This document shows positions 11,528 to 51,299 of a stretch of 64,000 bases of DNA, in pieces. How positions within the stretch are numbered: the first letter of the stretch is position 1; every line of letters starts with the position of its first letter. The notes below the pieces were generated by a model. That model did not search any database and was not told where the DNA came from. It saw only the letters and a list, made by a program, of their open reading frames with translations. The stretch is taken from positions 248,001 to 312,000 of IMG/VR virus record IMGVR_UViG_3300031669_000001; one strand, 5' to 3'. The position numbers and the translations under genes are program-made.

Positions 11528-12298
11528 TTATTTGCCAGCCAAATACAGCTCATAAGTGCGAGGGAACTGCTTCTGAATCAGTTCACCTACTGCATCTGCA
11601 TACTGACGAATTTCCCATTGAGCTGCAGGTGCCTGCCGCAACGTCAAGAATGCAAGCCAATTGCGAAGATTTGCGCTGGCTCTCATTCGAGAATAACGTG
11701 CAACAGGCACTGGAAGACGAGCGAGTTCCTTTGGAATTCCAGCTTCAATTCCCTGCTCATAGATCGATTGGCAATTTTCGTAGCAAATCTCAAGAGTTGA
11801 TCTCCAATCTTTTGCTTCCTGCTCAGTTAACGCCTTACCTGTTCCTTGAGCTTGCTTGTTGGTAGTTGTAGTGTTTGCACCTAACATCAATCGTTCGATC
11901 GAAGGGATGTAGTTCTCGTCTGGAAGAGGGATGTAGCGAGCTGACATCTCATTGTAGCTCTGCGTGCGATGACGGTGCCATTCACGGAACACGAAGATAG
12001 GAGCCTTGACTTCGATTACCATACCAGCCATTTCAAATGGAGTGGAGTGCTTGTTGTTGTAGAGGAAAGCAAGAAGCTTTTCATCTCCTGGAGTATCGTG
12101 ATCACACGTACAACGACGACTTATCGCCTCGAGGTGAGGAAGGTTGGAAGAGAGTCTACATGCCTTGGAATGATTTGGACCCCATCCAAGGAATCCTTTT
12201 CCAGTTGACATGCGTGCTGCCTCGATGATGCTTTCATCGCTTCCCCAATGATCGATAAAGCTAACGTAACCTTGGTCTAACACATCTAATTTCTTCAT
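11528..12298 (-). CDS. thyX: Flavin-dependent thymidylate synthase ThyX
   Basis: REWHRHRTQSYNEMSARY ThyX motif; HSTPFE; NLRNWLAFL; QWEIRQYA. Confidence 0.95.
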   Translation of the reverse strand: MKKLDVLDQGYVSFIDHWGSDESIIEAARMSTGKGFLGWGPNHSKACRLSSNLPHLEAISRRCTCDHDTPGDEKLLAFLYNNKHSTPFEMAGMVIEVKAPIFVFREWHRHRTQSYNEMSARYIPLPDENYIPSIERLMLGANTTTTNKQAQGTGKALTEQEAKDWRSTLEICYENCQSIYEQGIEAGIPKELARLPVPVARYSRMRASANLRNWLAFLTLRQAPAAQWEIRQYADAVGELIQKQFPRTYELYLAGK

Positions 12299-18788: not shown

Positions 18789-19379
18789 TTAAATTGTGAT
18801 TTGAAAGATGTTGTCGATTTTGTTGTAGAGATTATTTATTCCCAACGTTTTGTCATTTAGGATGACAAAATCACTATCTTCATGAGTGATACCAGCTTCT
18901 GATGCATGTTGATACTTTTCATCTCGCACGAGATTAGGAACTATGATGTAGATCAAGATTGAATCTGGTTGCGATCTAACCCAGTCTGCCTCATTCTGAA
19001 AGCGAACGTCGGTGATGATCGTCTTAAAACCTTCAGCTGCGTTCTTTTTAACCTCAAGCTCAGCTCGCCTTATCCAAATATCATCACGAACCATCTGCCT
19101 ACCGAATTCAGTACCGAGAAGTTGAAACATTCTGCGAGGTGTTAACCCACCGCCCCAGAATTCATCTTCGGCTTCTTTGAGAATTCTGTCTTCGAGCTGT
19201 TCATCGCTAAAGCCAAACATGATCTGACATGCTCGTTTTACTGGATTTGCAAAAGCGTAACGCTTCCACCTCGGTGGTCCTGAGATAGTTTTATCCATAG
19301 CGCTGATGTAGTTCGCGACTGTATCTTTTCCACCGTTTAAAGGCCCGTGGATGCCTATCAATTTGGGAATTTTGTTCAT
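18789..19379 (-). CDS. Deoxynucleoside monophosphate kinase (T4 gp1-like)
   Basis: GIHGPLNGGKDT, FANPVKR, TPRRMFQLLGTEFGR, IITDVRFQNEA, HASEAG. Confidence 0.9.
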   Translation of the reverse strand: MNKIPKLIGIHGPLNGGKDTVANYISAMDKTISGPPRWKRYAFANPVKRACQIMFGFSDEQLEDRILKEAEDEFWGGGLTPRRMFQLLGTEFGRQMVRDDIWIRRAELEVKKNAAEGFKTIITDVRFQNEADWVRSQPDSILIYIIVPNLVRDEKYQHASEAGITHEDSDFVILNDKTLGINNLYNKIDNIFQITI

Positions 19380-25150: not shown

Positions 25151-25179
25151 TTTCTCACATTTCTATAGCTAAGATGTGT

Positions 25180-25209
25180 ATTATATCACAAATCGCGTTA
25201 AAAGGTAAA
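25180..25209 (-). promoter_or_regulatory. Early promoter
   Basis: TTTACC-N18-TATAAT with TGTGA. Confidence 0.7.
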
Positions 25210-25821
25210 TTTATTTTGGTTGACATTTATGTCTACCATCATTCCGAGCTCTCTTGCTTCATCCCTGAGATATCGACCTTCATCTTTTGTTGAATCTCTG
25301 TAGTAAGGTTTTGCATCTTTCCACAGTAACTGCTGATCAACAACGTTGCTGTCGATTAGTAGCCAAGGTACTATGAACTTTCTACCATCATTTTCTTTCA
25401 CGTAGAAGGAGATGATGTAGTCGTACTTTTTCCAGTAAGTGAAGAGCTGATCATCCATGCTCTTGCTGCTAAAGCAGAACAGGAATGGGAAGCTTTTACC
25501 TTTAAACTTGATCTCGCACTTTGCGCCTTCAACTTCAACGTCCCAGTAGAACTGTTTAGTTTTTGGTTCATCATTGTGAACAACGTTGACACCCGCATCC
25601 TTCAACGCGTTGTAGATACCATGTTCTCCAAGCTCTCCGACTTGAGTAGATCGAATGACATCTTTTAGCGATCGTGCGTCACTTCCATATTGCGCGTAGA
25701 AGATCTTTGACTTCTCAAGAACTTCAGCTTCAAACGCTGGATCGCTTTCGATGTCAGTTACGTCAATCGGTTTGGAAAGCACCTCTCGGATGAGAAGCGC
25801 CGTTGGATGATCAAGCTTCAT
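25198..25821 (-). CDS. denB: T4 endonuclease IV (DenB)-like PD-(D/E)XK nuclease
   Basis: VIRSTQVGELGEHGI...QFYWDV...KCEIK parallels the T4 DenB pattern (IERCRIAVYAEF...YAWDV...RVEVK) as recalled; not aligned computationally. Confidence 0.6.
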   Translation of the reverse strand: MKLDHPTALLIREVLSKPIDVTDIESDPAFEAEVLEKSKIFYAQYGSDARSLKDVIRSTQVGELGEHGIYNALKDAGVNVVHNDEPKTKQFYWDVEVEGAKCEIKFKGKSFPFLFCFSSKSMDDQLFTYWKKYDYIISFYVKENDGRKFIVPWLLIDSNVVDQQLLWKDAKPYYRDSTKDEGRYLRDEARELGMMVDINVNQNKFTF

Positions 25822-28534: not shown

Positions 28535-29251
28535 TTATATTTTTATTTTATCATCTTCCGTAAGAAATTTACATTTTTCAAAATGCCATTGGTTCATGGT
28601 ATTTTTGGATATTTCTCGTTTACAATGAGGACATTGAATTTTCAGGTGGGATGCAGCTATCATCTTTTTCATCTGTTCAGGAGATGAAGTATTTTTACGT
28701 TCTTTATTTGAAGCAATAATACTTTCACGATGATTGGTGGATATAATGCGCTTCTCTCCTTTACGATGTTTACCTTTGCCGCCGATAGACATTTTAGTGA
28801 GTGTCTCAACAGAACGATTTTGTTGAGCTAACGACATTTTGGTACGAGTTTCAACAGAAATGTTTTGTTTAGCGATCTTCATTCTTGCACGTGATTCGGC
28901 AGAATGTTTTCGTCCTGTCATTTTAGCGATCGTTTCCGCGGTATGCCCTGAACTACCACCCCAGATTCCATTTTCAGGCATTAAATTAAGCCATAAATCT
29001 GATTTCACAATGTCTTGATGTTCACTAAACATTAGCGCAAACTTTGTGAGCTCTTCCTGCTCAGTGAACAGACAATACCAAAGAGTCTCTACATACTCGC
29101 GACCATGTTTCTTAATATGACGTTTCCAACGTTTCCCTGATCCAAGGTATTGGAATTTAGAAAGATCACCCGTAGTCTTACCGAAATAACACTTTCCTGT
29201 GATAGAATGCAGCTTGATATAAAGATAGGTAGGTCTAAAGTTAATCGTTAT
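28535..29251 (-). mobile_element. Free-standing GIY-YIG-like homing endonuclease with NUMOD3-type repeats; non-AUG start
   Basis: The frame is open 73 codons upstream of the annotated ATG: (I)TINFRPTYLYIKLHSITGKCYFGKT...YLGSGKRWKRHIKKHG. C-terminus has HTAETIAKM/HSAESRARM repeats and CPHC. Confidence 0.75.
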
Positions 29252-29783
29252 TGATCTCCAAAATCAGATTAAAGCCCTCACTACGAGACGGAGCGACATA
29301 CGAATTGAACATGTTCTTCAGCACAAAAGGAGGGATTACTTTCCCCGTCAAGGCTGCACGTGCATCAAGACGAGCTTGCAACACCTTGTCATCGCAGGTG
29401 AAGTTCAGACAAATCTTGTTGTACGAGTCTGGTACTACGGCAAGTTTCGACGTGCGAGCCTTGCGACCCATGTTTGTTTGATCGTGGAAGATGTTCTTGC
29501 GAGCTAGGATAGCTTTAGCGATCTGCTCTTCCATCTCACGCTTAACCTTCTTCTGATTCACTTTGTGAAAAGCTTCGGAGTACGTCAACCCCATCTTCGC
29601 AGCTTCGATTTCGACTAGGTCGTCCGTCGATGCCAAGATGAATGGATTACACGCACCGTTAGATTCTTCTTGAAGTTTCTTCAAGAATGTAGATTTGCCT
29701 ACACCAGGAGCGCCGACCATCATGACGTATGACGGTGTTTGCCATTCCTGAAGTAAACGCTGGATTGCTGTAGATGGTTTCAT
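29241..29783 (-). CDS. P-loop kinase (polynucleotide kinase / AAA_33 type)
   Basis: MMVGAPGVGKST, STDD, DQTN...R, R...TGK.IP...EGF. Confidence 0.85.
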   Translation of the reverse strand: MKPSTAIQRLLQEWQTPSYVMMVGAPGVGKSTFLKKLQEESNGACNPFILASTDDLVEIEAAKMGLTYSEAFHKVNQKKVKREMEEQIAKAILARKNIFHDQTNMGRKARTSKLAVVPDSYNKICLNFTCDDKVLQARLDARAALTGKVIPPFVLKNMFNSYVAPSRSEGFNLILEINND

Positions 29784-29818: not shown

Positions 29819-30334
29819 CTAAAGTTTGAGTTTCTTCAGTTCTTTGATCGTCTTAGCAGCGCTGACGTGTAGAATTCCTATTCCACCTGCAGCTACCCAA
29901 GGATCAATGGACTTGGAACGATCGTCTATCAGAATAGAATGTTCGTTTGCATACTTTGACTTTTCCTTAGACTGTCTTACAAACAGCGCTCTCTTAGCAG
30001 CTTCGTATCCGAGGTGCTTCTTTACCCACTCTCGCTTTTCTTCAGCTGCCCTTGGAGTGTGTCCTGTCGAAGATAGGACAATCGGATCATACTTCTTAAT
30101 GTGATTCCAAAGCACCATAGCGTCTGGCATTAAGTCCATGTGCTCGAAGAACTTTTTACCAGAACGAGCTCTCTTGTCAAGCTCCTTAAAGAATTCACTC
30201 GTCTCTCTATCGTCGGCCTTGTCGAGATCGATGCCAGTAACTTCTTTAGCCTTCTTCATGAAGTCTGCCAAGACTCCATCTAGGTCCACGTAGACGGTGT
30301 AGTGATTTGGATTTAAGATTTCCGTAAGCTTCAT
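29819..30334 (-). CDS. HAD-superfamily 5'(3')-nucleotidase-like phosphatase with MKLTEIL N-terminus
   Basis: YVDLDGVLADF motif I; LSST; KREWV; ILIDDR motif IV. Confidence 0.85.
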   Translation of the reverse strand: MKLTEILNPNHYTVYVDLDGVLADFMKKAKEVTGIDLDKADDRETSEFFKELDKRARSGKKFFEHMDLMPDAMVLWNHIKKYDPIVLSSTGHTPRAAEEKREWVKKHLGYEAAKRALFVRQSKEKSKYANEHSILIDDRSKSIDPWVAAGGIGILHVSAAKTIKELKKLKL

Positions 30335-32564: not shown

Positions 32565-32932
32565 TTGACGAATCCATAACGAATCAACATGATAGGACTC
32601 GATCCGTCAGACCACTTACAATCAACCTTGATAGCAAGCTGATTGAATCTTTTTGCTCCGCGATTAGCATCGAAGTACATTTCCTCCTCTACCCAATCGC
32701 TAACCCATGTCAGATTGTTATCGTGAATGATCTGATCTGACCTTGACAGGCTTAGCTTGAGATGTCCACACCAAACTTCAACGAGATTATAACCATCATC
32801 TCGTATCGTAACGTAGAATCTGTTCAGTCTAATCTTGACAACTTCGTAAAGTTGTCCTACTCGCAGTCTAGGTGGTTTATCGAAGTAAGGCATCGATGTC
32901 AGCGTAACTGGAGAACCGATTTCCAAGTTCAT
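32558..32932 (-). CDS. Hypothetical protein
   Basis: 124-aa ORF coupled to the CoaE-CoaD stop. Confidence 0.55.
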   Translation of the reverse strand: MNLEIGSPVTLTSMPYFDKPPRLRVGQLYEVVKIRLNRFYVTIRDDGYNLVEVWCGHLKLSLSRSDQIIHDNNLTWVSDWVEEEMYFDANRGAKRFNQLAIKVDCKWSDGSSPIMLIRYGFVKC

Positions 32933-34020
32933 TTGTGAACGTCCTTGAGCTTTTCAAGAACACACTTTGAAACGTAAGGAGCTGCAACTCTCTCCCACTC
33001 TCGAAGCGCTAAGGCCCCCTTGATCAGAGAAGAACTAATCTCTATCAGTTCACGAGGCGTCATCAAGAAGATCGTTTCAATCTCAGGCGCTATCTTCTTC
33101 TGAAGAAGGTTCAATTGATTTTCATACTCAAGGTCTGTAGCGCCTCGAAGTCCCCTGAAGATAAACTTTGCGCCTGAGTTTGCTGCGTAACTAACGATCA
33201 GTTCGTCGGATGGAATGAAGTCGATTGTGACTCTCGCCATTTGTTCAGGTGACAGGACTTCTTGTAACGTGCACTTTACTAGCTGCGATCTCGTCTCATC
33301 ATCGAAAAGGTATTTCTTAGATGGGTTTGATGCTACAGCGACGATGATATAGTCCACTATATCAAGCGCTCTTTGAATGACCCAGGTGTGTCCCAGTGTA
33401 ATCGGATCGAATGATCCAGACACTATACCGATCTTCTTTCCCTTCAGCTGCTTCTTACGCATGAGGTCAAGAGCTTTCTTTATCTCCAATTGAAGATAAT
33501 TTTCTTCATGTATCGCTCTTATTCCATTGTAGATTATCGCATCGCTAACCGCAAATCTATGTTCGTCTGTAGTTTGAGATTCCATGATAGCCAAAATTTG
33601 ATCTTGTGATCGTCCATCTCTATCACTCACTCGCTGAATCTGTAAGCTAGGGGGAGACACCACTGAGATTACAAAGTCAAACCTTGAAATCAACGTTGGA
33701 GCGTTCTCAACTAATAACGGGAACTCTAGGATAAAGTCATTCCTTTGCATAAGAGTTTCAATCTTCCTAGAGATTATGTCATGAAAGATGAATTCAAGCT
33801 CTTTCATCGCTTGCTTATCTGCAAAAACAATATCACGTATCTTTAATCGATCGCTTGTTCCAAATTCCAGCCTTAAAGCGCTGCATATTTCTGGATTATC
33901 ATACGCATCCCTTACAAATTCATCTATGCTAAAGACGTGATGATTTGGAAGAGCGTCAGCTAACAACTGACATACTGTTGATTTGCCTGAACCTATCCCA
34001 CCTGTTACTACGATCTTCAT
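32929..34020 (-). CDS. coaE-coaD: Fusion of dephospho-CoA kinase (CoaE, N-terminal) and phosphopantetheine adenylyltransferase (CoaD, C-terminal)
   Basis: MKIVVTGGIGSGKSTV...RDIVFAD...PLLVE...QIQRVSDRDG...SQ (CoaE); GSFDPITLGH, NPSKKYLF, FRGLRGATDLEYE, ISSSLIK (CoaD). Confidence 0.9.
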   Translation of the reverse strand: MKIVVTGGIGSGKSTVCQLLADALPNHHVFSIDEFVRDAYDNPEICSALRLEFGTSDRLKIRDIVFADKQAMKELEFIFHDIISRKIETLMQRNDFILEFPLLVENAPTLISRFDFVISVVSPPSLQIQRVSDRDGRSQDQILAIMESQTTDEHRFAVSDAIIYNGIRAIHEENYLQLEIKKALDLMRKKQLKGKKIGIVSGSFDPITLGHTWVIQRALDIVDYIIVAVASNPSKKYLFDDETRSQLVKCTLQEVLSPEQMARVTIDFIPSDELIVSYAANSGAKFIFRGLRGATDLEYENQLNLLQKKIAPEIETIFLMTPRELIEISSSLIKGALALREWERVAAPYVSKCVLEKLKDVHK

Positions 34021-35484: not shown

Positions 35485-35808
35485 TCATGTCTTCCTTACC
35501 CCTTGTTCCCATTTAGTTAACTTTTCAAGTGCTCTGAACTGTAGCAGCATTTCGATTTCTTCGTTTGACCACTCGCTATCTTTGTACATCAGGTGAATGA
35601 TGTCGACGACTGCTGCTATCACATCGACACACTCACCAATGATTCCATCAGGGCCCGGTTGCCGATTCTTGTGACCGCTAACGATTGCAATCTCTGTTGC
35701 AAGTTCTCCTACTTCTTCCATGAGCGTCATCAAGACGTCGCGAGGATCACGACCATTCTTTATCTTGTCGCTTGTTTCTAGAACTTGCGTTATCAGCGTG
35801 TTTGTCAT
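35485..35808 (-). CDS. MazG-like nucleotide pyrophosphohydrolase
   Basis: LMEEVGELA...IIGECVDVI acidic helical motif. Confidence 0.75.
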   Translation of the reverse strand: MTNTLITQVLETSDKIKNGRDPRDVLMTLMEEVGELATEIAIVSGHKNRQPGPDGIIGECVDVIAAVVDIIHLMYKDSEWSNEEIEMLLQFRALEKLTKWEQGVRKT

Positions 35809-36693: not shown

Positions 36694-38178
36694 TTACGCG
36701 TAGGTGGTATCTGCCCGTGCCCAAGACTGTACTTCATCGAAGTCTTGGAAGCGTTTTTGCGCACCATCTTTTGACCACAATCTCCAGCCAGGACCATCAA
36801 CGAAGAAGGAAGCTGGGTTGGCAGTGCAATCACGAACCTCCAACTCACCGCTTTCCAGTTCGAAAGGACGAACCAAACCACGCAGAGACTTCTTGCCCAG
36901 GTCGGTGATTGGTTCTTTAACCAAAGACCTCCAACCGTTTGCATCCATCATCGCGATTGCCTTCATGCTGAAGCTGAAGTCATCGCGAGCACCTTCGTGG
37001 GTAACACCAGCACCCATACCCAAGGTCAGGCTGTCCATGCTGTAACCTTTGCTAGTGAATCCTTCCAGCACTGGCTCGATGGTGTTGATGCGGATTCCAT
37101 CACCTTGGATGACGGCGGTGCAAGGTGCCAAGACCTTGTAACCGGCTGCATTCTTGTGGACACCGAAGGTATCTTCGATGTCCTTTGCGACCCGCGCCGG
37201 CTCAACAGTTGCATCGCCAGAGTCAGGACGCATGACCATCACACCACCACTGTTCTCGATCTCTTCGCGGAAGGTTTCACCCATGTACTCACGAACGAAG
37301 CGGCGAGCATTGTAGGTGTCGATAACGACGCTCAACAGTGGGATGCCTATGCCGCGCTTAGTACGAGCAACAACGGCGTGCAGGCGTTTCACTGCCATCT
37401 TCGCGGCGCCGAAGTCATCACGCTTGTCAGCGTCGCTGTGCGCGCACATTACGCTGTGCTCAGTAGCTTCAACGCTTGAGGTGTATGGCTTGTTGGAGAA
37501 AACGGTGTTCTTGTTGAACAGAGCTTTGATGTAACTGTTTGCGCGAGTGCAATCGCTACCATCGAACATCGCTGCGTGAGCGATACCCGCGATGACAGCA
37601 GCTTCATCTGGACTGTCTGCACCACGATCGCCGAAGTTGTGCAGCTTGTAATTCAGCATTCCCATGTTGGCGCCGGTCTTCTGCATGTACTTGGCGATGA
37701 TGATGCGAGCTGCGCGGCAGGTACTTGCTACGGTAGACATCTTCCAGACGGTGCATTGAACGACAGTCTCGACATAAGTAGGCAACCAGGCAAAGAGATC
37801 GTGAGTATTGACGATACCCAGCACTGGAGTTTGAGGCTTGACGATACGACCTTCTTCAACTGCCCATACTTCCAGCGGCAGCTTGCCGTCCAAATAGTCG
37901 ACCATGTACTGCCAGTCGGCGCGGTTGAATTCGTATCCTTGTTGGGTGATTTCGATATCAGCTTCATCGACCATCCACTGTTCGATGCGCACTGAAGCCA
38001 AAAAGTTTGCTACGTAGGTTTGACCCATCGCGACGATCTTATCTGCGTACTTGCTGGGTTTACGTGGAACGATAGCTGCGTAAGAACGCAGAGTTCCGTC
38101 GGGCAATTCTTGCCAGTGACCAGCTTTGTAGCTGTCGCAGGCCAGAATAAAGTTGAAGCGCTTTATCATTTGTAACAT
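36694..38178 (-). CDS. nadV: Nicotinamide phosphoribosyltransferase
   Basis: DSYKAGH, LHNFGDRG, EATEHSVM, SVVIDTYN, VMRPDSGD, VIQGDG, GMGAG, KEPITDLGKKS. Confidence 0.95.
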   Translation of the reverse strand: MLQMIKRFNFILACDSYKAGHWQELPDGTLRSYAAIVPRKPSKYADKIVAMGQTYVANFLASVRIEQWMVDEADIEITQQGYEFNRADWQYMVDYLDGKLPLEVWAVEEGRIVKPQTPVLGIVNTHDLFAWLPTYVETVVQCTVWKMSTVASTCRAARIIIAKYMQKTGANMGMLNYKLHNFGDRGADSPDEAAVIAGIAHAAMFDGSDCTRANSYIKALFNKNTVFSNKPYTSSVEATEHSVMCAHSDADKRDDFGAAKMAVKRLHAVVARTKRGIGIPLLSVVIDTYNARRFVREYMGETFREEIENSGGVMVMRPDSGDATVEPARVAKDIEDTFGVHKNAAGYKVLAPCTAVIQGDGIRINTIEPVLEGFTSKGYSMDSLTLGMGAGVTHEGARDDFSFSMKAIAMMDANGWRSLVKEPITDLGKKSLRGLVRPFELESGELEVRDCTANPASFFVDGPGWRLWSKDGAQKRFQDFDEVQSWARADTTYA

Positions 38179-38870: not shown

Positions 38871-39113
38871 CTATTCTAATGGAAGTACATACCTTTTTTG
38901 GAACTGGAATCCTTCTCCGCGAAGGTAACATCCAAGATATGGACCTCTTTGACCTGGATCACGAGGGAAACCTTCTTCGAACAGCTTAACTTCTCCATAT
39001 CCAAGAGAGTTCAGCCAAGTTTGAAGTTGATCTTTAGTCAAGATATAGTCGTCAAGGTCTTGCCACTCTGTAACGGGAGTATCACAAAACACTCGACGAC
39101 TCTGGTACGTCAT
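38871..39113 (-). CDS. Hypothetical protein
   Basis: 80-aa ORF coupled to the ATP-grasp stop. Confidence 0.55.
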   Translation of the reverse strand: MTYQSRRVFCDTPVTEWQDLDDYILTKDQLQTWLNSLGYGEVKLFEEGFPRDPGQRGPYLGCYLRGEGFQFQKRYVLPLE

Positions 39114-39922
39114 CTCTCCATCCCTTCCAACGCCATCACTATCTCCATCACGTTTCCTGCGTAGAAGCCAGATGCATTGATGGTGTTGATCTCTACTATC
39201 TTCATGCCGTCAGGAGTCTCACAGACGTCAAGTACGTAAGCTCTGTGCGGTTGCCATGCACTCGTTGTCATGCTCAAGGTGATATCACCAAAGCGGATAA
39301 CTTGGGCTGCAAACCAACGCACCGCGTCATCAACGACAGGTGAATAGATCACGCGATTGCCTCTTTTGTAAAGAGAGGCTGTAACAATTTTCTTATCGAC
39401 TATCCAAAAACGGTACTCAGCAAAGATCTTCTTTGGAGTGCAGACTTGGACGAGAGTGCTAGGCATTAAGCTGTTACCGTAGTCCAGTTCCAACACGCAA
39501 ACGTTACGCTGCCAATCCTGAAATTCTTCCCACTCAAAGACCCGGCCAGCGAAGACCTTCGAGTCCTCGATAGGACGAATGAACCGCGGCTCATCATCAG
39601 TCCAATGCACGTCTTTGAACTGAACAACTTTAGCGTCAGCGTTCAGCATCATGTCACCCCAATGCTGCAATTGAATCTCAAAGTTGATAGGCTCGAGATC
39701 ATACACTCCTGGGTTCCAGTTGTTTGCCTTTGCTGCATGACGCATCGAGTATGATCCAAAGCAGATAACTTTGTCCTGCTTGGGTTCAGCGGGCGGTACC
39801 AACTCACCGATGAAGGGTACTACCTTGTGAATAGAGTATGGAATCTTGAAGCGATCCAGCGTTCCAACCAAGTTATCCCACTCGGCTTCATTGAACAAAT
39901 TTGTTTGTAAAATCCAGTGCAT
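39110..39922 (-). CDS. ATP-grasp domain protein (DUF4343/R2K-like)
   Basis: FIRP...K.F.G.V; EYRFWIV; YVLDV...KIVEIN..NASGFY. Confidence 0.8.
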   Translation of the reverse strand: MHWILQTNLFNEAEWDNLVGTLDRFKIPYSIHKVVPFIGELVPPAEPKQDKVICFGSYSMRHAAKANNWNPGVYDLEPINFEIQLQHWGDMMLNADAKVVQFKDVHWTDDEPRFIRPIEDSKVFAGRVFEWEEFQDWQRNVCVLELDYGNSLMPSTLVQVCTPKKIFAEYRFWIVDKKIVTASLYKRGNRVIYSPVVDDAVRWFAAQVIRFGDITLSMTTSAWQPHRAYVLDVCETPDGMKIVEINTINASGFYAGNVMEIVMALEGMER

Positions 39923-40255: not shown

Positions 40256-41413
40256 TCATAATTTCCCCAGCATGTACTCGATGATGAAGTAGTGATCTTC
40301 GAAGAACATCTCAGGGCTCTTCATCACTTCATCCAATGGAACCCACCAGGCCTTCTCAGCATCATCGTCACCCTTAACCTTCGGCAGCGATATCTTGCCG
40401 TCTACTACGAAGTCAGGCAGCTTAAACAAAAATCCCTTGGTGACAGTGCGACCGCGTAAGGAACGTTCAGGATAATCGAAGTCTTCTTTGAAGATCATCG
40501 AGCTGCGCAGAATCGGTTCAGGAACCTTGATGCGAGTCTCTTCACGCAGTTCACGGATTGCAGCTTCAAACAATCGTTCTTTGGGGTTCAAGAAGCCTCC
40601 AGGCAGCGCCCACAAACCTTTTCCAGGACGGCTACGACGTTTAACCAGCAGCACGTGACCAGTTTGGATGACGATTGAATCAACCGTCTGGAAGATTGGT
40701 TCGTAGCGAAGACCGGGATCATTTTGACCATAAGTTCCAGGATCACGTGGTATGTTCGGTTTACGATACTCGATGTTGAAGAGATGCTCTTCACGCAGGT
40801 TGTCGTAGAATGGAGTCTCTTCGAAAGCGCGAAGCTCATTAATCGTTTCAGCTGGCAAGAATGCGTTCAATAACAATTCTGCGTGGTTAGCGGTGATCTC
40901 GTTGCCATCGAATGAACGGCCAAAGTAGATTTCACGGACTGCGGTGGCGGTCAAGAAGCGACTGACTTCCATATTTTCATCGACCATGTCAGCGATGAAG
41001 TTAGGAAAGTACTTCAAGTAGAACGTTGAGGAATCACGATCAGCACCAGTGATTCTGATCTCAATGTCTTTGGGATTGAGTTTGACTTGCTCAGCGCTAT
41101 CAACGAACTCGTTGATCACCTTGTTAACGTTTGCTATCCAAAGTTGATCATTGTAGGGGAAGTCTCGAATGCCACGCACTGATACCGGTGCATTTTTAGC
41201 GTGTGGAGTCCAAGGACGAGATGCCCACTTATCAATGACGCTTGCACGTTCTTCAAACGTCCAGGGATTTTTGGGATTTCTTGCTTGATTGATGGAACCG
41301 ATGAGGACCAGCACAGCGTCCGAGCGCTCACGTGCTCGCTTCAGAACTTCTGCATGTCCATTGTGGAATGGGGAAAATCGACCGATGTACACGGTCAGTA
41401 CAAACTTAGCCAT
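40256..41413 (-). CDS. natV: Bifunctional NMN adenylyltransferase / ADP-ribose pyrophosphatase (NadM-Nudix, NatV)
   Basis: YIGRFSPFHNGH, KNPWTFEER, D.PYNDQLW; Nudix box GLWALPGGF...E.L.EAAIRELREET; DDAEKAWW; FFEDH. Confidence 0.95.
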   Translation of the reverse strand: MAKFVLTVYIGRFSPFHNGHAEVLKRARERSDAVLVLIGSINQARNPKNPWTFEERASVIDKWASRPWTPHAKNAPVSVRGIRDFPYNDQLWIANVNKVINEFVDSAEQVKLNPKDIEIRITGADRDSSTFYLKYFPNFIADMVDENMEVSRFLTATAVREIYFGRSFDGNEITANHAELLLNAFLPAETINELRAFEETPFYDNLREEHLFNIEYRKPNIPRDPGTYGQNDPGLRYEPIFQTVDSIVIQTGHVLLVKRRSRPGKGLWALPGGFLNPKERLFEAAIRELREETRIKVPEPILRSSMIFKEDFDYPERSLRGRTVTKGFLFKLPDFVVDGKISLPKVKGDDDAEKAWWVPLDEVMKSPEMFFEDHYFIIEYMLGKL

Positions 41414-42582: not shown

Positions 42583-43293
42583 TCAGTTAACGATTCGTGA
42601 AGTGTTTGGTTGAAGCGTGTTACGTCTATTTAAACTTCCATCAGAATCCTTGAACCACGTCGTGTACATGATCTGTTGACTCATTGTCTGTAGTTCATTA
42701 AATGCGTGGATTACAACTTCAAGTAACTTTTCAGGAGCTACAAAATTTCCAGATCCATCGTTGACGTCAAGCAAAAGTTTGTGCTTTACCTGGGACTTCT
42801 CAAACGCTCTAATGAAGTCCATCTGTTCTTCATCCTTCTTATCGAAGTTGAATGATAACCCATCGTCCTTGATGAAATCGAAAGATGAAGTGTGAAGAAG
42901 AACCAACAACGTGTTATCCAGAAAAGCTGGATAATTTTGCTCTAAGTTGAAAACGTAATCACCTGAATAACCGCGGTAGCGATGAGAATAAACTGCTTCT
43001 CCGAGGTGAGCCCTGTTCATGATAAATGGAACATCAGTAGACAGCAGCTTCATCATGTCAATGAAAGAAGCTGCTTGATACAGTTTTTGTGCCAAAGATT
43101 TAACGTTTGCCCCATCATAATCATCCGGAACATTCAGGACTTGTCTAGCCTGCTTCACGTAATGATCTAGAATTTCAGGCTTTTGATAATGGATCTCTTG
43201 GAAGAACCCTAAGCGATTTTTGATGCCACTTATGAGCGTGTTCTTTCCAAGGCGATCGATGCCTTCGATTATGATAGAATTTAGCATTGTCAA
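42583..43293 (-). CDS. Thymidylate-kinase-like dNMP kinase
   Basis: IIIEGIDRLGKNT P-loop; IMNRAHLGEAVYS..YRGY. Confidence 0.8.
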   Translation of the reverse strand: MTMLNSIIIEGIDRLGKNTLISGIKNRLGFFQEIHYQKPEILDHYVKQARQVLNVPDDYDGANVKSLAQKLYQAASFIDMMKLLSTDVPFIMNRAHLGEAVYSHRYRGYSGDYVFNLEQNYPAFLDNTLLVLLHTSSFDFIKDDGLSFNFDKKDEEQMDFIRAFEKSQVKHKLLLDVNDGSGNFVAPEKLLEVVIHAFNELQTMSQQIMYTTWFKDSDGSLNRRNTLQPNTSRIVN

Positions 43294-43653
43294 TTACATC
43301 TTTGTGCCAGGGCGTGCAAGCTTGATGTTGGATGTTTGTTCCAGGTAACCATCTTCAACAGCTTTTTCTGCTGGGTAAACGGCAGCTGCACAATTTGTGA
43401 GGTTGATGGTGAACATTCCATCTTGATTTCCGAGAGACCACGGGAAGAAGGCGATAGCCATTTCATTCTTGTTGATCTGTTGTGCAGTGATACCGCGAAC
43501 TTTTTCAATCGTGATGTTGCCTTCTGGTTCCCAAGGACCTTTACCAGTGAATTGATAACCATCTTCTGAACCACCAAGCAGTACCTTTTTGTCTTCAACC
43601 ACGCGACCTAGAATTTCTTCACCACTGTTCAAACGTACGCATACTACTTTCAT
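43294..43653 (-). CDS. Sm-like-fold phage protein
   Basis: VCVRLNSGEEILGRV...FFPW pattern of small beta-barrel proteins in T4-like phages. Confidence 0.55.
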   Translation of the reverse strand: MKVVCVRLNSGEEILGRVVEDKKVLLGGSEDGYQFTGKGPWEPEGNITIEKVRGITAQQINKNEMAIAFFPWSLGNQDGMFTINLTNCAAAVYPAEKAVEDGYLEQTSNIKLARPGTKM

Positions 43654-43686
43654 ATATTTCTCCTGTTATTTGTTTGTTGTATTTTA

Positions 43687-43812
43687 TGTCGGCGCGAGCA
43701 GGATGCCGGTATTCACTTCGCTAATCTCGCGCTGCTCGGGCGTGGCATCTTTTTCCTCGACGATGCGCTGCACATCGCCCTGTGCGTCGCGCACGATGCG
43801 TCCGTAGCCGTG
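43687..43812 (-). pseudogene. glmU: 126-bp internal fragment of a bacterial glmU gene
   Basis: Alternative frame reads [42 protein letters not shown], matching GlmU GYGRI...IVE.KDA..EQ..I.E.NTGI. 80/126 GC; 32/42 codons end in G/C. Confidence 0.9.
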
Positions 43813-44683
43813 ATGTGAGCCAACGCGTAAATTCAAACTCTTGAGGGATAGCTTCGAATTGACAAGCTCTCAAGAACTTAACTTCCGCTGGACCACTGAT
43901 AGGAGGACAAGAAATTTCCTCATAGGGATCTTTTTTGGTAGTTGGTAACGACAGAAAGTTTTCTCTATTTTCGATTGTCGATCCTGTGATCTTCTCAAGA
44001 AGCTCGAAGTGTCGTTCGTAAACGTGAAAAGAATCTGCAGAGTGATGATAGTTACCGTACTTCAACTCTGGATAAAATTCACGCAATGCATTGAGCACCA
44101 TCTCATGAGTAAAACTGAAAGCTGGAGCATCATTTGCCATTCCATAGACAGAATCCTGTGAACGCATCCTAACGCTCATGTTCAGAAAGTTTTCACGAAT
44201 CCTGAAGTTTAGCGCGTATGTACAAGGGACGTCATTAGTGTCGCTAAGAAGATGATCTCTGCTTAGAATCGATATAGAAGCTCTGCGAGAATCTTTGTCA
44301 TTCTTTAACTGATTGACGACGTTGTCAAATTGACTTACGGGAGTATCTCTGAAGATATATTGCCCGTAGTTTGAGTTTATGGATCCATCACGATTGATGA
44401 GATTGCCCCACATCTTTGCAAAGTCTGCTATGGAAGTATCAAACTTGTCACCTTTCAGGTACCAGAGAAATTCTCTCTTGACGTAGTCTAACTTGAAGCC
44501 GCGAGATGCAAAGCTTGTGAATCGGACGAAAGGTGGAAGGTTGTAGGTATAGTTTTCTATTTCAATGGACTTTTGACCTCGAGGAGATACTCTCTTTCCT
44601 CTTGCAATTAAGTCTTCATAGATGTTTCTAAATGTTGATTCGCTACTGACTACATTATCGTTGTGGTGTCCTGCATTTGACAT
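43721..44683 (-). CDS. Thymidylate-synthase-fold enzyme, probable dCMP hydroxymethylase/modifying enzyme
   Basis: DSRRA, DVPCT catalytic Cys, [13 protein letters not shown] (Asp in place of the ThyA Asn), SFHVYERH. The last ~29 aa derive out of frame from the glmU insert. Confidence 0.75.
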
Positions 44684-44839
44684 TATTCATCCCATCCTGG
44701 ATAAGGACCTAGTTTTATTGTTCTTGATTGATTTCCATCTTGCCTATTTTGGTATGTCGGGTATTTGAGGCATTATTTCAGGTGTTCTAAAGCATTCATT
44801 TGAATTTCCTTGATGTCGATCATTTCCATGATTTGATCA

Positions 44840-44868
44840 ATTATAACTTCACTGTAGCAAGAAGTAAA
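44840..44868 (-). promoter_or_regulatory. Early promoter for the ThyA-fold/kinase operon
   Basis: TTTACT-N17-TATAAT. Confidence 0.8.
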
Positions 44869-44880: not shown

Positions 44881-45984
44881 TTATTTTGACAAAGATTTTG
44901 ATAGATTTTTTGATAATTCATCTTCAATCAATTTAACATTTTTAATCAATCGGGCATCAGTTGGCTCAAATTCAAGTGCTTTTTTTGCCAAAGTCAATGA
45001 TTCTTCTTTAAGACCTAAATTATAAGCTGCTATAGCACAATAATCATAAGGAAAAGAATACCAAGCGGCGGGCTCACAAATATACGACATCGGCTTCTCG
45101 GTGATCTGCAACATTCGTTTCATGGCAAAGTAGAGACCATGCCAATTTTGCATCTGATAGTAAGTTTTTCCAAGGTCTAACCATGGCTCACGTTCACCAA
45201 TAGCTTCAGCGCACGCTTTCAAACCCCAAATTTCAGCTTGCTTAACGTCACCCTTTTCAAGGTAGCATCTAGATAGGAATCTCATAGAAGCGCAACGCTC
45301 AGCATCCCACTTAGCACGTGGAAGAGATAGATGTCGCTTCAATTCATCGATAGCTTTGTCATACTGTTTGTAGTACATGTATTCTCGACCGAGATAGTGA
45401 GAATTTCTGTCATCTTCAGGTTCATCTCTACAACCCATCTCCAATAGAGGTAGGTAACTTCCTCTAGACTTTGTTTTATCAGGATAATGAAAGAGCGTGA
45501 AGTCATGACAGTAAGTTTGAACTTCTTTGATGTCATAGTTGTGAAGAACTTCATGGACAGGTTTTACCCAACGATAACCTTTGCGAGAGTGAATCTTGTC
45601 ATACCAAAAAGTGGTCCCAGGTCTACCATCTGGAAGAGTGTTCCAGACGTATTGATAGCGAAGTCTAGTTGTTTCAGGAGTCCATGCTTTTTCGATCGCA
45701 GCTCTCCAACCTGGTGTAAGAACCTCATCAAGATCGATACAGACGCAGACGTCTACATCTTCTGGAACGAACTGTAATGATGCATTACGAGGAATGTCAA
45801 ACCTCCACGGCTTCATCTCGATCGAGTGAACTATCGCACCTTCATCCCGAAGCATCTGTACTGTGTTGTCTGTTGATCCGGTGTCAGCAACCACGATAAG
45901 GTCAGCTTCATCTTTGATAGAAGCCATGAAGCGCTTTACAAACTTTTCCTCATTCTTACAGATTGTGTAAACTGCTATCTTCAT
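44881..45984 (-). CDS. GT2 glycosyltransferase with TPR-like C-terminus
   Basis: AVYTICKNEE, VVADTGSTD.T, FDIPRN, IDLDE (DxD), VHE; helical TPR-like tail. Confidence 0.9.
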   Translation of the reverse strand: MKIAVYTICKNEEKFVKRFMASIKDEADLIVVADTGSTDNTVQMLRDEGAIVHSIEMKPWRFDIPRNASLQFVPEDVDVCVCIDLDEVLTPGWRAAIEKAWTPETTRLRYQYVWNTLPDGRPGTTFWYDKIHSRKGYRWVKPVHEVLHNYDIKEVQTYCHDFTLFHYPDKTKSRGSYLPLLEMGCRDEPEDDRNSHYLGREYMYYKQYDKAIDELKRHLSLPRAKWDAERCASMRFLSRCYLEKGDVKQAEIWGLKACAEAIGEREPWLDLGKTYYQMQNWHGLYFAMKRMLQITEKPMSYICEPAAWYSFPYDYCAIAAYNLGLKEESLTLAKKALEFEPTDARLIKNVKLIEDELSKNLSKSLSK

Positions 45985-47000
45985 TTTGCTTCCTTTATCT
46001 GCTTTGTAAGTTGATCAAATCTTGTTCCCCAACAACCTGCGTTATATTCGTAGCCGTATGTACGCTCTGTGATCTTTGCTGCACGTTCCATTGTAGCAAC
46101 AGCATCTGATTGTCGACCAGCTTCAAGATAAGTTTGTGCTAGATAAACAACGTATTCACGAACCTTAGGTGCATGCTTGACTACGTTCATCATGTTCATG
46201 ATCGCCGAATCATAATCCTTCTGACGCTTGTTGATTCCAGAGAGTTGATAATGTAGAAAGGCCTTATCAGAATCAGGTAATGTGAGAGCATGCTCAATCG
46301 CTTCTGCCGCTTCTCGATAGAAACCTGCGTTGATATATTCACCTGCTAGAAATGAAAATGTCTTCCAACGCTTCTTATCTTCGATAGCAGACTGTTTAAG
46401 CATCGTAAGATAACTTCCTCTATTCTTTGAGGTGTCTGGTTTTTGAGTCATTTGAATGTCTTTGAGCCACCTAACTTCATCAGGCGTACCATCACACTTA
46501 ACAATATGTTCGTGAACAGGAAGCTTCCACATATAACCATGTCGAGTGTGAATTCTTTCATGCCAATGTTCACTTACATTGCTGTTAGTTGTCTGCCAAT
46601 CCCAGATCGTTCTGAACCTGTGGTGATAACGATCATGTGGTTTACCTCTAGCTGCGATATCTTCCTCAACTGCAGTCTTTAAGATTTGGTACCAACCAGG
46701 CTCCAGCATCTCATCTGCATCAATGGAAACGCAAATATCAACATCACTTGGTAATGACATGAGAGCTGTATTGCGCGCATCGTCGAAACGCCACGGACTA
46801 ACGAATATATTTTTGACGATAAGATTTTTATGTTCTTTGCTTAAATCTGCTAAAATGTCGATTGTCTCATCTTTTGATCCAGTATCACAAATTACGATGG
46901 AATCAGCTTCTTTTATCGATTCATAACAACGTTTTATGAATTCTTTTTCATCTTTGCAGATCATGTAAATGCCTATCTTTACTGTCATTAAATTCTCCAT
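45981..47000 (-). CDS. GT2 glycosyltransferase with TPR-like C-terminus (paralogue)
   Basis: GIYMICKDE, ICDTGSKD.T, WRFDDARN, SIDADE, VHE. Confidence 0.9.
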   Translation of the reverse strand: MENLMTVKIGIYMICKDEKEFIKRCYESIKEADSIVICDTGSKDETIDILADLSKEHKNLIVKNIFVSPWRFDDARNTALMSLPSDVDICVSIDADEMLEPGWYQILKTAVEEDIAARGKPHDRYHHRFRTIWDWQTTNSNVSEHWHERIHTRHGYMWKLPVHEHIVKCDGTPDEVRWLKDIQMTQKPDTSKNRGSYLTMLKQSAIEDKKRWKTFSFLAGEYINAGFYREAAEAIEHALTLPDSDKAFLHYQLSGINKRQKDYDSAIMNMMNVVKHAPKVREYVVYLAQTYLEAGRQSDAVATMERAAKITERTYGYEYNAGCWGTRFDQLTKQIKEAK

Positions 47001-47001
47001 G

Positions 47002-47009
47002 CATAAATA
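47002..47009 (+). promoter_or_regulatory. Late promoter box
   Basis: CATAAATA upstream of 47067. Confidence 0.6.

Positions 47010-47066: not shown

Positions 47067-51299
<4,233 letters not shown>

What the first reader, a model, noticed from the sequence alone, without database searches (positions are those of the whole stretch)
42583..44868. ThyA-fold enzyme with dCMP-type signature plus dedicated kinase: probable modified-cytosine genome
Seen: ThyX already supplies dTMP. The second enzyme has catalytic Cys (DVPCT) and [12 protein letters not shown], with Asp where E. coli ThyA has Asn177. It shares an early promoter with a TMK-like kinase, and a second dNMP kinase, a MazG-like pyrophosphatase (35485) and a DenB-like nuclease are also present. 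Established: the equivalent Asp179 of T4 dCMP hydroxymethylase gives dCMP specificity. Inference: synthesis of 5-hydroxymethyl-, 5-methyl- or 5-hydroxy-dCMP, with any hypermodification unresolved.
Basis: partly seen in the sequence, partly recalled or inferred. Interest (0 to 1): 0.75.

Follow-up and report, generated by a model that had tools for sequence, protein, structure and literature searches.

The report
T4-type hydroxymethylcytosine pathway in jumbo phage
A 345-kb uncultured soil phage, distantly T4-like, encodes a thymidylate-synthase relative with the exact active-site signature of T4's dCMP hydroxymethylase, plus kinases, a MazG-like pyrophosphatase and a T4 beta-glucosyltransferase homologue. 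It therefore very probably replaces cytosine by (glucosyl-)5-hydroxymethylcytosine, a known defence-evasion strategy in a lineage where it had not been recognised.

Summary
ORF 43721..44683 (-) has the ThyA fold (PF00303). It carries the catalytic Cys (DVPC) and Asp where ThyA has Asn177. ThyX (11528..12298) is the genome's only other dTMP-synthase-type gene.

In E. coli numbering the enzyme reads D143/C146/T147/D169/D177. This is identical to T4 gp42. It differs from ThyA/Td, from dUMP hydroxymethylases, from a dCMP methyltransferase and from the RB69 5-hydroxy-dCMP synthase. The predicted product is 5-hydroxymethyl-dCMP.

Elsewhere the genome encodes a T4 beta-glucosyltransferase homologue (outside the window), a gp1-type dNMP kinase (18789..19379), a dCMP deaminase and a MazG-like NTP pyrophosphatase (35485..35808).

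The adjacent kinase (42583..43293) has a TMK/YorR-type fold and is not a 5-hmdU DNA kinase by sequence. Similar small kinases sit beside ThyA homologues in RB69, HHU4 and metagenomic jumbo phages. In the cultured relative RsoM2USA it lies in one cluster with hydroxymethylase, deaminase and beta-GT, and no gp1-type kinase was found there.

A T4-early-like promoter, one of 21 copies genome-wide, precedes the gene.

The gene's 3' end carries a 123-nt insert copied from a co-occurring betaproteobacterial glmU. A sister strain lacks it.

No DenB homologue was found. Verdict: a new member of a known kind.

The parts
44840..44868 (-). T4-early-like sigma-70 promoter (TTTACT-17-TATAAT) upstream of the ThyA-like gene
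   Evidence: Consensus scan gives 10 of 12 matches. It belongs to a family with 20 minus-strand copies and 1 plus-strand copy in the genome, against 0.25 expected; 17 of the 20 are intergenic. No minus-strand terminator is predicted before the kinase.
43721..44683 (-). dCMP hydroxymethylase (T4 gp42-type ThyA homologue). The native part is 43811..44683; the last 31 codons are read out of frame from the insert.
   Evidence: PF00303. Best solved relatives are MilA CMP hydroxymethylase (2.5e-20) and T4 dCMP hydroxymethylase (1.2e-19), against ThyA at about 1e-8. Signature D143/C146/T147/D169/D177 equals T4 gp42 and is invariant in 119-120 of 120 homologues. Tree.
43688..43810 (.). 123-nt insert derived from a betaproteobacterial glmU, placed just before the native stop codon
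   Evidence: The peptide is 93% identical to Gallionella GlmU. DNA alignment. It is 100% identical to a bacterial contig in another soil run, and both junctions are bridged in the source run. Sister strain L085 lacks it.
43294..43653 (-). 119-aa Sm-like/DUF6561-like viral protein between hydroxymethylase and kinase; role unknown
   Evidence: Conserved in L085 and L086. Atlas look-alikes carry PF16243 or PF20198.
42583..43293 (-). TMK/YorR-type nucleotide kinase; candidate hm-dCMP (dNMP) kinase
   Evidence: PF02223 scores 22.6 bits, below its cut-off. AF2 model has pLDDT 94. Foldseek tops are thymidylate kinases and SPbeta YorR. The P-loop EGIDRLGK resembles type-I TMPKs. No hit in ViI, M6, phiW-14, T4 or SPO1. 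Weak collinear hits fall on kinases next to ThyA homologues in RB69, HHU4, L129 and L131.
35485..35808 (-). MazG-like all-alpha NTP pyrophosphatase; candidate dCTPase
   Evidence: phrog_1247 at 6e-23. The profile hits YpjD and 5ie9. The AF2 model has pLDDT 96.6. Foldseek tops are iMazG, mouse and human DCTPP1, 5ie9 and MazZ.
18789..19379 (-). T4 gp1-type deoxynucleotide monophosphate kinase
   Evidence: PF21448 at 75.5 bits, above the 27.1 cut-off. BLASTP to T4 gene 1 gives 5e-10.
11528..12298 (-). ThyX flavin-dependent thymidylate synthase (dTMP supply)
   Evidence: PF02511 at E 8e-41.

Best explanation
The ORF at 43721..44683 encodes a folate-dependent dCMP hydroxymethylase of the T4 gp42 type. 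The mechanism below is inferred from the family. Cys154 (the C146 equivalent) attacks C6 of dCMP. Asp185 (the N177 position) selects cytosine. Methylene-THF supplies the carbon. The exocyclic methylene is hydrated rather than reduced, which goes with Asp151 at the L143 position, and the product is 5-hydroxymethyl-dCMP.

The gene is transcribed from a T4-early-like promoter, probably together with a small Sm-like ORF and a TMK/YorR-type nucleotide kinase. One or both of that kinase and the gp1-type dNMP kinase at 18789..19379 convert hm-dCMP to hm-dCDP. Host NDP kinase would make the triphosphate, and the phage's gp43-like polymerase would incorporate it.

A MazG-like pyrophosphatase (35485..35808) is the candidate dCTPase that removes dCTP and supplies dCMP. 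ThyX plus a dCMP deaminase supply dTMP. After replication, a T4 beta-glucosyltransferase homologue (genome 75639..76760, outside the window) most likely glucosylates 5hmC in DNA.

Shown here: the fold, the signature, the gene content, the synteny and the promoter family. Inferred: every enzymatic activity and the composition of virion DNA.
For: Signature and relatives:
- The signature is identical to T4 gp42. It differs from ThyA/Td (L/C/H/D/N), dUMP hydroxymethylases (D/C/N/D/N), PaMx74 dCMP methyltransferase (N/C/P/D/D) and RB69 5hodCMP synthase (E/C/T/N/D).
- The residue rules are published in PMC13326640 and PMC8670742.
- The signature is invariant across 120 homologues.
- The best solved relatives are cytosine hydroxymethylases.
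- Every NCBIfam thymidylate-synthase equivalog scores far below its cut-off.
- The tree groups the family with Xp15/HHU4 and T4 gp42, apart from ThyA and the dUMP hydroxymethylases.
- The nearest cultured-phage homologues outside the lineage, Xp15 and HHU4, sit beside an annotated carbamoyltransferase (Xp15) or a gene of the same size and position (HHU4). Carbamoyltransferases of this kind are a known 5hmC-tailoring enzyme.

Pathway genes in the same genome:
- beta-GT homologue: PF09198 at 52.7 bits against a cut-off of 27. The alignment is full-length and keeps T4 Asp100 and the SFRSGQR motif.
- gp1-type DNMK.
- dCMP deaminase.
- MazG-like enzyme in the structural neighbourhood of dCTPases.
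- ThyX as a separate dTMP source.

Synteny and expression:
- In RsoM2USA the hydroxymethylase (gp10), deaminase (gp8), TMK-like kinase (gp6) and beta-GT (gp2) form one cluster. No PF21448 kinase was found in that genome.
- Promoter family.
- Contigs with no mismatches on both genes occur in an RNA library.
Against: - There are no chemical data on the DNA.
- The 123-nt insert replaces the native C-terminus (...WLTS-stop) with a 31-residue Arg-rich tail in this strain and might impair the enzyme.
- No homologue of T4 gp56 was found by sequence, and the MazG-like enzyme's specificity is unknown.
- No DenA, DenB or Alc homologues were detected by BLAST or phmmer, so exclusion of cytosine may be incomplete.
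- T4 gp42 sits on a very long branch, so its place in the tree is unsure.
- The PaMx74 methyltransferase has Asn, not Leu, at position 143, so the position-143 rule is a correlation rather than a proof.
- The TMK-like kinase's substrate is untested, and the homologous 'nucleotide kinases' of RB69 and DLP3 have no assigned role.
Confidence: 0.68

Rival explanations
1. The enzyme is a flavin-dependent 5-hydroxy-dCMP synthase of the RB69 gp48 / DLP3 gp80 type, and the DNA carries glycosylated 5-hydroxycytosine.
For: It shares Asp177, an acidic residue at 143 and Thr147 with RB69 gp48. A TMK-like kinase next to the ThyA homologue is also seen in RB69, DLP3 and RL38J1.
Against: The diagnostic D169N substitution is absent. 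Asp169 is kept here and in 120 of 120 homologues. RB69 gp48 falls on the other side of the tree. The glycosyltransferase found is a T4 beta-GT homologue, not a GT-B arabinosyltransferase-like enzyme.
Confidence: 0.06
2. The enzyme is a dCMP methyltransferase of the Xp12/PaMx74 type, and the genome carries 5-methylcytosine.
For: Asp at position 177 gives dCMP specificity in both enzyme types.
Against: Position 143 is Asp, as in all hydroxymethylases compared. PaMx74 has Asn143 and Pro147 and groups with ThyA/Td at 100/99 support. A beta-glucosyltransferase homologue would have no substrate on 5mC.
Confidence: 0.06
3. This is a thymidine-hypermodification module: a dUMP hydroxymethylase plus a 5-hmdU DNA kinase, as in M6, ViI and phiW-14.
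For: A ThyA homologue beside a P-loop kinase is the hallmark of those clusters.
Against: Position 177 is Asp, not the Asn of all four dUMP hydroxymethylases compared, and position 147 is Thr, not Asn. The kinase profile finds nothing in the ViI, M6 or phiW-14 genomes at E<=1. The kinase fold matches mononucleotide kinases. I did not search for an aGPT-Pplase.
Confidence: 0.03
4. The hydroxymethylase is real, but the adjacent TMK-like kinase is not dedicated to hm-dCMP. It could be the phage's dTMP kinase or serve another nucleotide step, with the gp1-type kinase handling hm-dCMP.
For: It is the only TMK-like gene in the genome. A gp1-type DNMK is present. In RB69 the gp1-type kinase was the one shown to phosphorylate the modified dCMP.
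Against: Adjacency to ThyA homologues recurs in unrelated phages. RsoM2USA keeps this kinase in its modification cluster, and no gp1-type kinase was found there. T4 gp1 already phosphorylates dTMP (annotation).
Confidence: 0.3
5. In this strain the gene is damaged by the glmU insert, or the insert is an assembly artefact, so the ORF as read does not represent a working enzyme.
For: Sister strain L085 lacks the insert and ends ...WLTS-stop. Logan contigs break inside the insert, where the sequence is shared with abundant bacterial glmU.
Against: Only residues after position 291 are changed. All catalytic residues, and the C-terminal extension shared with RsoM2USA, are intact. Both junctions are bridged without mismatch at phage-like depth, and no insert-free joint was seen in the source run.
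Confidence: 0.12

Closest known systems
Phage T4 gp42 dCMP hydroxymethylase with gp1, gp56, cd and beta-glucosyltransferase (glucosyl-hmC pathway)
   Same: Same active-site signature, D143/C146/T147/D169/D177. The genome has homologues of gp1, cd and beta-GT and many T4 core replication and structural genes. The early promoter is of the GTTTAC...TATAAT type.
   Different: Only about 30% identity to gp42. There is an extra 50-residue C-terminal extension shared with RsoM2USA. ThyX replaces Td. No gp56, DenA, DenB, Alc or alpha-GT homologue was found by sequence. An additional TMK/YorR-type kinase is co-transcribed with the hydroxymethylase. The genome is 345 kb with 43% G+C.
Ralstonia phage RsoM2USA gp10 (annotated 'putative thymidylate synthase') and cluster gp2-gp10
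   Same: The closest cultured relative. Hydroxymethylase 62-64% identical, kinase 45%, beta-GT 43%, with the same signature.
   Different: In RsoM2USA the genes are clustered with a dCMP deaminase and a GIY-YIG gene. It has Td rather than ThyX, and no gp1-type kinase was found. Its paper does not discuss DNA modification.
Xanthomonas phage Xp15 gp36 and Acinetobacter phage HHU4 ThyA homologues (carbamoyltransferase-linked; 5hmC to 5-carbamoyloxymethyl-C type, PMC8670742)
   Same: 36-39% identity, the same D/C/T/D/D signature and a sister position in the tree. HHU4 has a small P-loop ORF directly upstream.
   Different: This genome has no carbamoyltransferase. It has a beta-GT homologue instead.
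RB69 gp48 / DLP3 gp80 5-hydroxy-dCMP synthases with adjacent TMK-like 'nucleotide kinase' (PMC13326640)
   Same: Cytosine-specific ThyA homologues with a TMK/YorR-like kinase next door and a separate gp1-type dNMP kinase.
   Different: They carry D169N and use flavin and O2; this enzyme keeps Asp169.
Thymidylate kinase and SPbeta YorR
   Same: Fold and P-loop of the 42583..43293 kinase.
   Different: Below the Pfam and NCBIfam cut-offs. It has an NRAH motif in place of DRY and an extra C-terminal beta-hairpin domain.

Membership tests
T4 gp42-type dCMP hydroxymethylase (5hm-dCMP synthase) | ThyA fold with the catalytic Cys146 | tested here: met
   PF00303 at 73 bits. Cys154 aligns with C146.
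T4 gp42-type dCMP hydroxymethylase (5hm-dCMP synthase) | Asp at the ThyA Asn177 position (cytosine specificity) | tested here: met
   Asp185; 120 of 120 homologues.
T4 gp42-type dCMP hydroxymethylase (5hm-dCMP synthase) | Acidic residue at the ThyA Leu143 position (water access, non-methyl product) | tested here: met
   Asp151 in NDVPC; 119 of 120 homologues.
T4 gp42-type dCMP hydroxymethylase (5hm-dCMP synthase) | Asp169 retained (folate-dependent; not the D169N hydroxylase type) | tested here: met
   Asp177 in RSQD.
T4 gp42-type dCMP hydroxymethylase (5hm-dCMP synthase) | Converts dCMP and methylene-THF to hm-dCMP and THF | not testable with these tools
   Needs an enzyme assay or the in vivo plasmid LC-MS assay of PMC13326640.
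Canonical thymidylate synthase ThyA | Asn177, Leu143 and His147; score above the equivalog cut-offs | tested here: not met
   The residues are D, D and T. The best NCBIfam score is 54 bits against a cut-off of 327.
5-hydroxy-dCMP synthase (RB69 gp48 type) | Asn at the ThyA Asp169 position | tested here: not met
   Asp is retained.
dUMP hydroxymethylase (SPO1 gp29, M6, ViI, phiW-14) | Asn177 (uracil specificity) | tested here: not met
   Asp. These enzymes form a separate clade with 96/93 support.
dCMP methyltransferase (PaMx74/Xp12 type) | Groups with ThyA; non-acidic residue at 143 | tested here: not met
   PaMx74 has Asn143 and groups with ThyA/Td at 100/99 support. The window's enzyme has Asp143 and lies elsewhere in the tree. 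The Xp12 sequence itself was not available.
Thymidylate kinase (for ORF 42583..43293) | TMK fold and P-loop | tested here: met
   Foldseek probability 1.0 to many TMKs, TM about 0.5-0.7. The P-loop EGIDRLGK is shown.
Thymidylate kinase (for ORF 42583..43293) | Score above the family cut-offs (Pfam PF02223, TIGR00041) | tested here: not met
   22.6 bits against 27; 18 bits against 83.
[quoted passage not shown] | Sequence homology to M6 gp54, ViI gp67/gp243 or phiW-14 gp37 | tested here: not met
   The profile of 28 family members finds nothing in those genomes at E<=1. The positive control, RsoM2USA, scores 2e-72.
T4 beta-glucosyltransferase (genome 75639..76760, outside the window) | PF09198 above its cut-off; full-length alignment that keeps catalytic Asp100 | tested here: met
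   52.7 bits against a cut-off of 27. BLASTP gives 2e-31 over 370 columns, with FTD aligned to LCD and SFRSGQR aligned to TFRGGRR.
T4 gp1 dNMP kinase (window 18789..19379) | PF21448 above its cut-off | tested here: met
   75.5 bits against a cut-off of 27.1.
dCTPase (gp56 / DCTPP1 type) for ORF 35485..35808 | All-alpha MazG fold with the EExGE...E..D metal site | tested here: met
   Invariant E32, E35, E39, E59 and D62. The fold matches iMazG and DCTPP1.
dCTPase (gp56 / DCTPP1 type) for ORF 35485..35808 | Preference for dCTP | not testable with these tools
   There is no sequence similarity to T4 gp56. Specificity needs an assay.

The most novel reading that the evidence does not exclude
The TMK/YorR-type kinases that sit beside cytosine-modifying ThyA homologues are seen here and in RsoM2USA, RB69 gp45, DLP3 gp78, RL38J1 gp214, HHU4 and metagenomic jumbo phages. 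They may form an unrecognised family of modified-pyrimidine nucleotide kinases. These could replace gp1 in some lineages. More boldly, they could phosphorylate the 5-hydroxymethyl group as the first step of a new cytosine hypermodification. In RsoM2USA the cluster also holds an amidinotransferase-like gene.
Probability: 0.15. Interest if true: 0.7.

Novelty: new member of a known kind. Interest (0 to 1): 0.4.

Why it matters
It predicts that a whole lineage of soil jumbo phages carries (glucosyl-)hydroxymethylcytosine DNA. This includes the cultured Ralstonia phage RsoM2USA, a biocontrol candidate whose gene is annotated as a plain thymidylate synthase. At least 1178 homologues exist in metagenomes.

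Such DNA affects restriction and CRISPR sensitivity, cloning and sequencing of these phages, and host-range prediction. The prediction can be tested at once by LC-MS on RsoM2USA.

The recurrent TMK-like kinase next to ThyA homologues has no assigned role and is a defined biochemical question.

The host-derived glmU insert gives a rare direct clue to the host of an uncultured phage, namely a Gallionellaceae-like betaproteobacterium.

Tried and rejected
Searches that found nothing:
- Megablast of the locus against GenBank phages found nothing. blastn found only RsoM2USA.
- The kinase profile found nothing in T4, ViI, M6, phiW-14 or SPO1. I therefore rejected both 5-HMUDK and gp1 membership for this kinase.
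- I looked in the genome for a carbamoyltransferase (Xp15-type tailoring): none.
- A second TMK: none.
- A second ThyA: none.
- T4 DenB and gp56 homologues by phmmer or BLASTP: none.
- The MazG-like ORF gave no Pfam or NCBIfam hit and no single-sequence PDB hit. It needed a profile and a model.

Readings I considered and set aside:
- The two GT2+TPR genes upstream (44881..47000) could be DNA glycosyltransferases. I rejected this as less likely. They hit the SunS peptide S-glycosyltransferase and the prolyl-4-hydroxylase peptide-binding TPR weakly. They also lie next to a 1410-aa GPT-repeat collagen-like protein, which is a likelier substrate.
- A first family alignment misplaced position 143. 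I corrected this by counting the residue three before the catalytic Cys.
- A scan for other G+C-rich islands found none as clear as the glmU insert.

I re-ran it without that row.
Full report
**Setting.** The window is bases 248001-312000 of a 345,069-bp virus record with direct terminal repeats, estimated complete. G+C is about 43%. A comparison of T4 ORFs with the genome finds distant homologues of many T4 core genes. These include gp43 polymerase, gp41, UvsX, gp17, gp18, gp20, gp23, topoisomerase II and rIIA/B. The phage is therefore a distant T4-like jumbo myovirus. Its closest GenBank relative is Ralstonia phage RsoM2USA, 343,806 bp.

**The observation.** On the minus strand lie three tightly packed ORFs. 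The first is a 320-aa ORF at 43721..44683. The second is a 119-aa ORF at 43294..43653. The third is a 236-aa ORF at 42583..43293, called as 234 aa from the ATG at 43287.

- The first ORF matches PF00303 at 73 bits against a cut-off of 24.
- The third matches thymidylate kinase only weakly, at 22.6 bits, below the cut-off.
- ThyX is at 11528..12298, and the genome has no other PF00303 gene.

**What the ThyA homologue makes.** Among solved structures the best sequence matches are cytosine hydroxymethylases: MilA at 2.5e-20 and T4 dCMP hydroxymethylase at 1.2e-19. Thymidylate synthases score 1e-11 to 1e-8. All NCBIfam thymidylate-synthase equivalogs score far below their cut-offs.

I aligned the enzyme with reference enzymes taken from their genomes. 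The references were E. coli ThyA, RB69 Td, the PaMx74 dCMP methyltransferase, the dUMP hydroxymethylases of SPO1, M6, ViI and phiW-14, T4 gp42, the RB69 gp48 5-hydroxy-dCMP synthase, Xp15 gp36, HHU4 and RsoM2USA gp10. PaMx74 is named as a 5mC phage with an Xp12-like enzyme in bioRxiv 10.1101/2024.12.05.627091.

Published work gives the residue rules:
- Position 177: Asn selects dUMP and Asp selects dCMP (PMC8670742; PMC13326640).
- Position 143: bulky hydrophobic goes with a methyl product, acidic with a hydroxymethyl or other product.
- Position 169: Asp to Asn marks the flavin-dependent 5-hydroxy-dCMP synthases.

At positions 143/146/147/169/177 the enzymes read as follows:

| Enzyme | 143/146/147/169/177 |
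|---|---|
| Window enzyme | D/C/T/D/D |
| T4 gp42, Xp15, HHU4, RsoM2USA gp10 | D/C/T/D/D |
| ThyA, Td | L/C/H/D/N |
| dUMP hydroxymethylases | D/C/N/D/N |
| PaMx74 dCMP methyltransferase | N/C/P/D/D |
| RB69 gp48 | E/C/T/N/D |

E58, Y94, R126, R127, R166, H207 and Y209 are also kept. Among the 120 closest of 1178 metagenomic homologues the signature is invariant: 119 of 120 for Asp143 and 120 of 120 for the others.

A maximum-likelihood tree puts the family with Xp15/HHU4 and T4 gp42. It lies apart from ThyA/Td plus PaMx74 (100/99 support) and from the dUMP hydroxymethylases (96/93 support). T4 gp42 and RB69 gp48 are long branches, so their exact places are unsure.

I conclude that the enzyme is a 5-hydroxymethyl-dCMP synthase.

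**The rest of the pathway.**
- T4 beta-glucosyltransferase has a full-length homologue at genome 75639..76760. The BLASTP E-value is 1e-27 against the genome. PF09198 scores 52.7 bits against a cut-off of 27. T4's catalytic Asp100 and the SFRSGQR UDP-binding stretch are aligned.
- T4 gene 1 (dNMP kinase, active on hm-dCMP, dTMP and dGMP by its annotation) has a homologue at window 18789..19379, with PF21448 at 75.5 bits.
- A dCMP deaminase lies at genome 47433..47984.
- The 107-aa ORF 35485..35808 is a MazG-like all-alpha NTP pyrophosphatase. It hits phrog_1247 at 6e-23. Its profile hits B. subtilis YpjD and 5ie9. The model has pLDDT 96.6. Its Foldseek neighbours are iMazG, mouse and human dCTPase DCTPP1, 5ie9 and phage MazZ. 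It is thus a plausible dCTPase, although it shows no sequence similarity to T4 gp56.
- No DenB, gp56, DenA, Alc or alpha-GT homologue was detected.

**The adjacent kinase.** A model built on 28 homologues (pLDDT 94) matches thymidylate kinases and the uncharacterised SPbeta YorR. The P-loop EGIDRLGK is of the type-I TMPK kind, with an Arg in the loop. That comparison rests on my own knowledge of human and yeast TMPK, plus the Candida hit.

A profile of the family finds nothing in ViI, M6, phiW-14, SPO1 or T4. The kinase is therefore neither a 5-hmdU DNA kinase nor a gp1-type kinase by sequence.

The profile does give weak, collinear hits to small P-loop ORFs that lie directly beside ThyA homologues. 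These are RB69 gp45, the HHU4 ORF at 25080..25577, and ORFs in two DnaE-type jumbo-phage contigs. All share the (E/D)GxDxxGK[ST] and LDRxxxSxxVY motifs.

PMC13326640 lists TMK/YorR-like 'nucleotide kinases' next to the ThyA homologues of DLP3, RB69 and RL38J1 without assigning them a role.

In RsoM2USA the kinase (gp6, 45% identical) lies in one cluster with the hydroxymethylase (gp10), a dCMP deaminase (gp8) and the beta-GT homologue (gp2). No PF21448 kinase was found in that genome. This is the best argument that the TMK-like enzyme phosphorylates hm-dCMP. In the window's genome the gp1-type kinase could share or take that step, so 'dedicated' remains unproven.

**Expression.** The site at 44868..44840 (TTTACT-17-TATAAT) belongs to a family with the consensus GTTTACTTT...TATAAT. 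It occurs 20 times on the minus strand and once on the plus strand, against 0.25 expected. Seventeen of the 20 copies are intergenic, whereas 17.5% of the genome lies outside ORFs of 100 aa or more. From my own knowledge it resembles the T4 early promoter consensus.

No terminator is predicted on the minus strand before the kinase. An RNA library from a related soil sample holds mismatch-free contigs on both genes. DNA carry-over cannot be excluded.

**An unexpected insert.** Bases 43688..43810 are the most G+C-rich 100-nt stretch of the genome. On the minus strand, in another frame, they read as a GlmU fragment. The best matches are 93% identical at the protein level to a Gallionella MAG, followed by other Gallionellaceae and Nitrosomonadales. 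DNA identity to that MAG is about 90%.

In a second soil run a bacterial contig is 100% identical over exactly these 123 nt and diverges on both sides. In the probable source run the phage contigs bridge both junctions without mismatch. They break at a 30-nt stretch shared with abundant bacterial glmU.

A sister strain, 94-97% identical at the nucleotide level and from a JGI sample, lacks the insert and ends ...FTRWLTS-stop. The insert sits just before the native stop codon and adds a 31-residue Arg-rich tail. Everything up to residue 291 is untouched, including the C-terminal extension shared with RsoM2USA.

I read it as a recent, strain-specific capture of host-like DNA and a clue to a Gallionellaceae-like host. 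An assembly artefact is less likely but not excluded.

**Neighbours.** The two GT2+TPR genes upstream (44881..47000) are conserved in relatives. Their weak similarities are to peptide glycosyltransferases and to a prolyl-hydroxylase peptide-binding TPR. They abut a 1410-aa collagen-like protein made of GPT-type repeats. I consider protein glycosylation likelier than DNA glycosylation.

In more distant relatives the ThyA homologue lies among sugar-nucleotide enzymes: epimerases, a DegT aminotransferase, an acetyltransferase and RGP. This hints at other sugar decorations there.

**Verdict.** This is a T4-type hydroxymethylcytosine pathway, probably with beta-glucosylation, in a distant jumbo-phage lineage where it has not been described. 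It is a new member of a known kind. The open points are the chemistry of the DNA, the substrate of the TMK-like kinase, the specificity of the MazG-like enzyme and the effect of the insert.

Noticed in passing
window 43688-43810: A 123-nt fragment of a betaproteobacterial (Gallionellaceae-like) glmU is inserted just before the stop codon of the ThyA-like gene. It is 100% identical to a bacterial contig in a related soil run and absent from a sister strain. It is a possible clue to the host.
   Followed up: yes
window 44881-51299: Two paralogous GT2+TPR glycosyltransferases (phrog_13126) lie beside a divergently transcribed 1410-aa collagen-like protein of GPT-type repeats. They are probably a fibre-glycosylation module rather than DNA glycosyltransferases.
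   Followed up: partly
whole genome; window copies at 4459, 17756, 25209, 29818, 31458, 32351, 44868, 63581 (minus strand): A conserved GTTTACTTT...TATAAT promoter family occurs 20 times on the minus strand and once on the plus strand, against 0.25 expected. Most copies are intergenic, and the motif resembles T4 early promoters.
   Followed up: yes
window 32929-41413: A cofactor-metabolism island: a CoaE-phosphopantetheine adenylyltransferase-like fusion (32929..34020), NAMPT (36694..38178), an R2K ATP-grasp protein (39110..39922) and an NMN adenylyltransferase-Nudix fusion (40256..41413).
   Followed up: no
window 29241-30334: An AAA_33/polynucleotide-kinase-like P-loop protein (29241..29783) lies next to an NT5C-type 5'(3')-deoxyribonucleotidase (29819..30334). 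They may also shape dNMP pools.
   Followed up: no
L002 (RsoM2USA 1631-14443): The RsoM2USA modification cluster also holds an amidinotransferase-like protein (gp5, 279 aa), a 443-aa TPR protein (gp4) and a GIY-YIG homing-endonuclease-like gene (gp7). No homologue of gp4 or gp5 was found in the window's genome by BLAST.
   Followed up: partly
L129, L130, L131, L132: In jumbo-phage contigs, three of them with DnaE-type polymerase genes, the same ThyA-homologue family sits among NAD-dependent sugar epimerases/dehydratases, a DegT aminotransferase, an acetyltransferase, RGP, DHH phosphoesterases and a dCMP deaminase. This suggests other sugar hypermodifications of hmC.
   Followed up: partly
proteins P0022, P0034, P0050, P0065, P0082, P0110: Some family members are 430-550 aa and carry NUMOD3 (homing endonuclease) or intein-splicing domains. 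The gene is therefore a target of mobile elements.
   Followed up: no
window 43294-43653: A 119-aa Sm-like/DUF6561-like viral protein is conserved between hydroxymethylase and kinase in close relatives. Its role is unknown.
   Followed up: partly
window 42999-43240 and 44014-44303: Mismatch-free contigs of the kinase and the ThyA-like gene occur in a soil metatranscriptome run (X3). This is compatible with expression in situ, though DNA carry-over is not excluded.
   Followed up: partly
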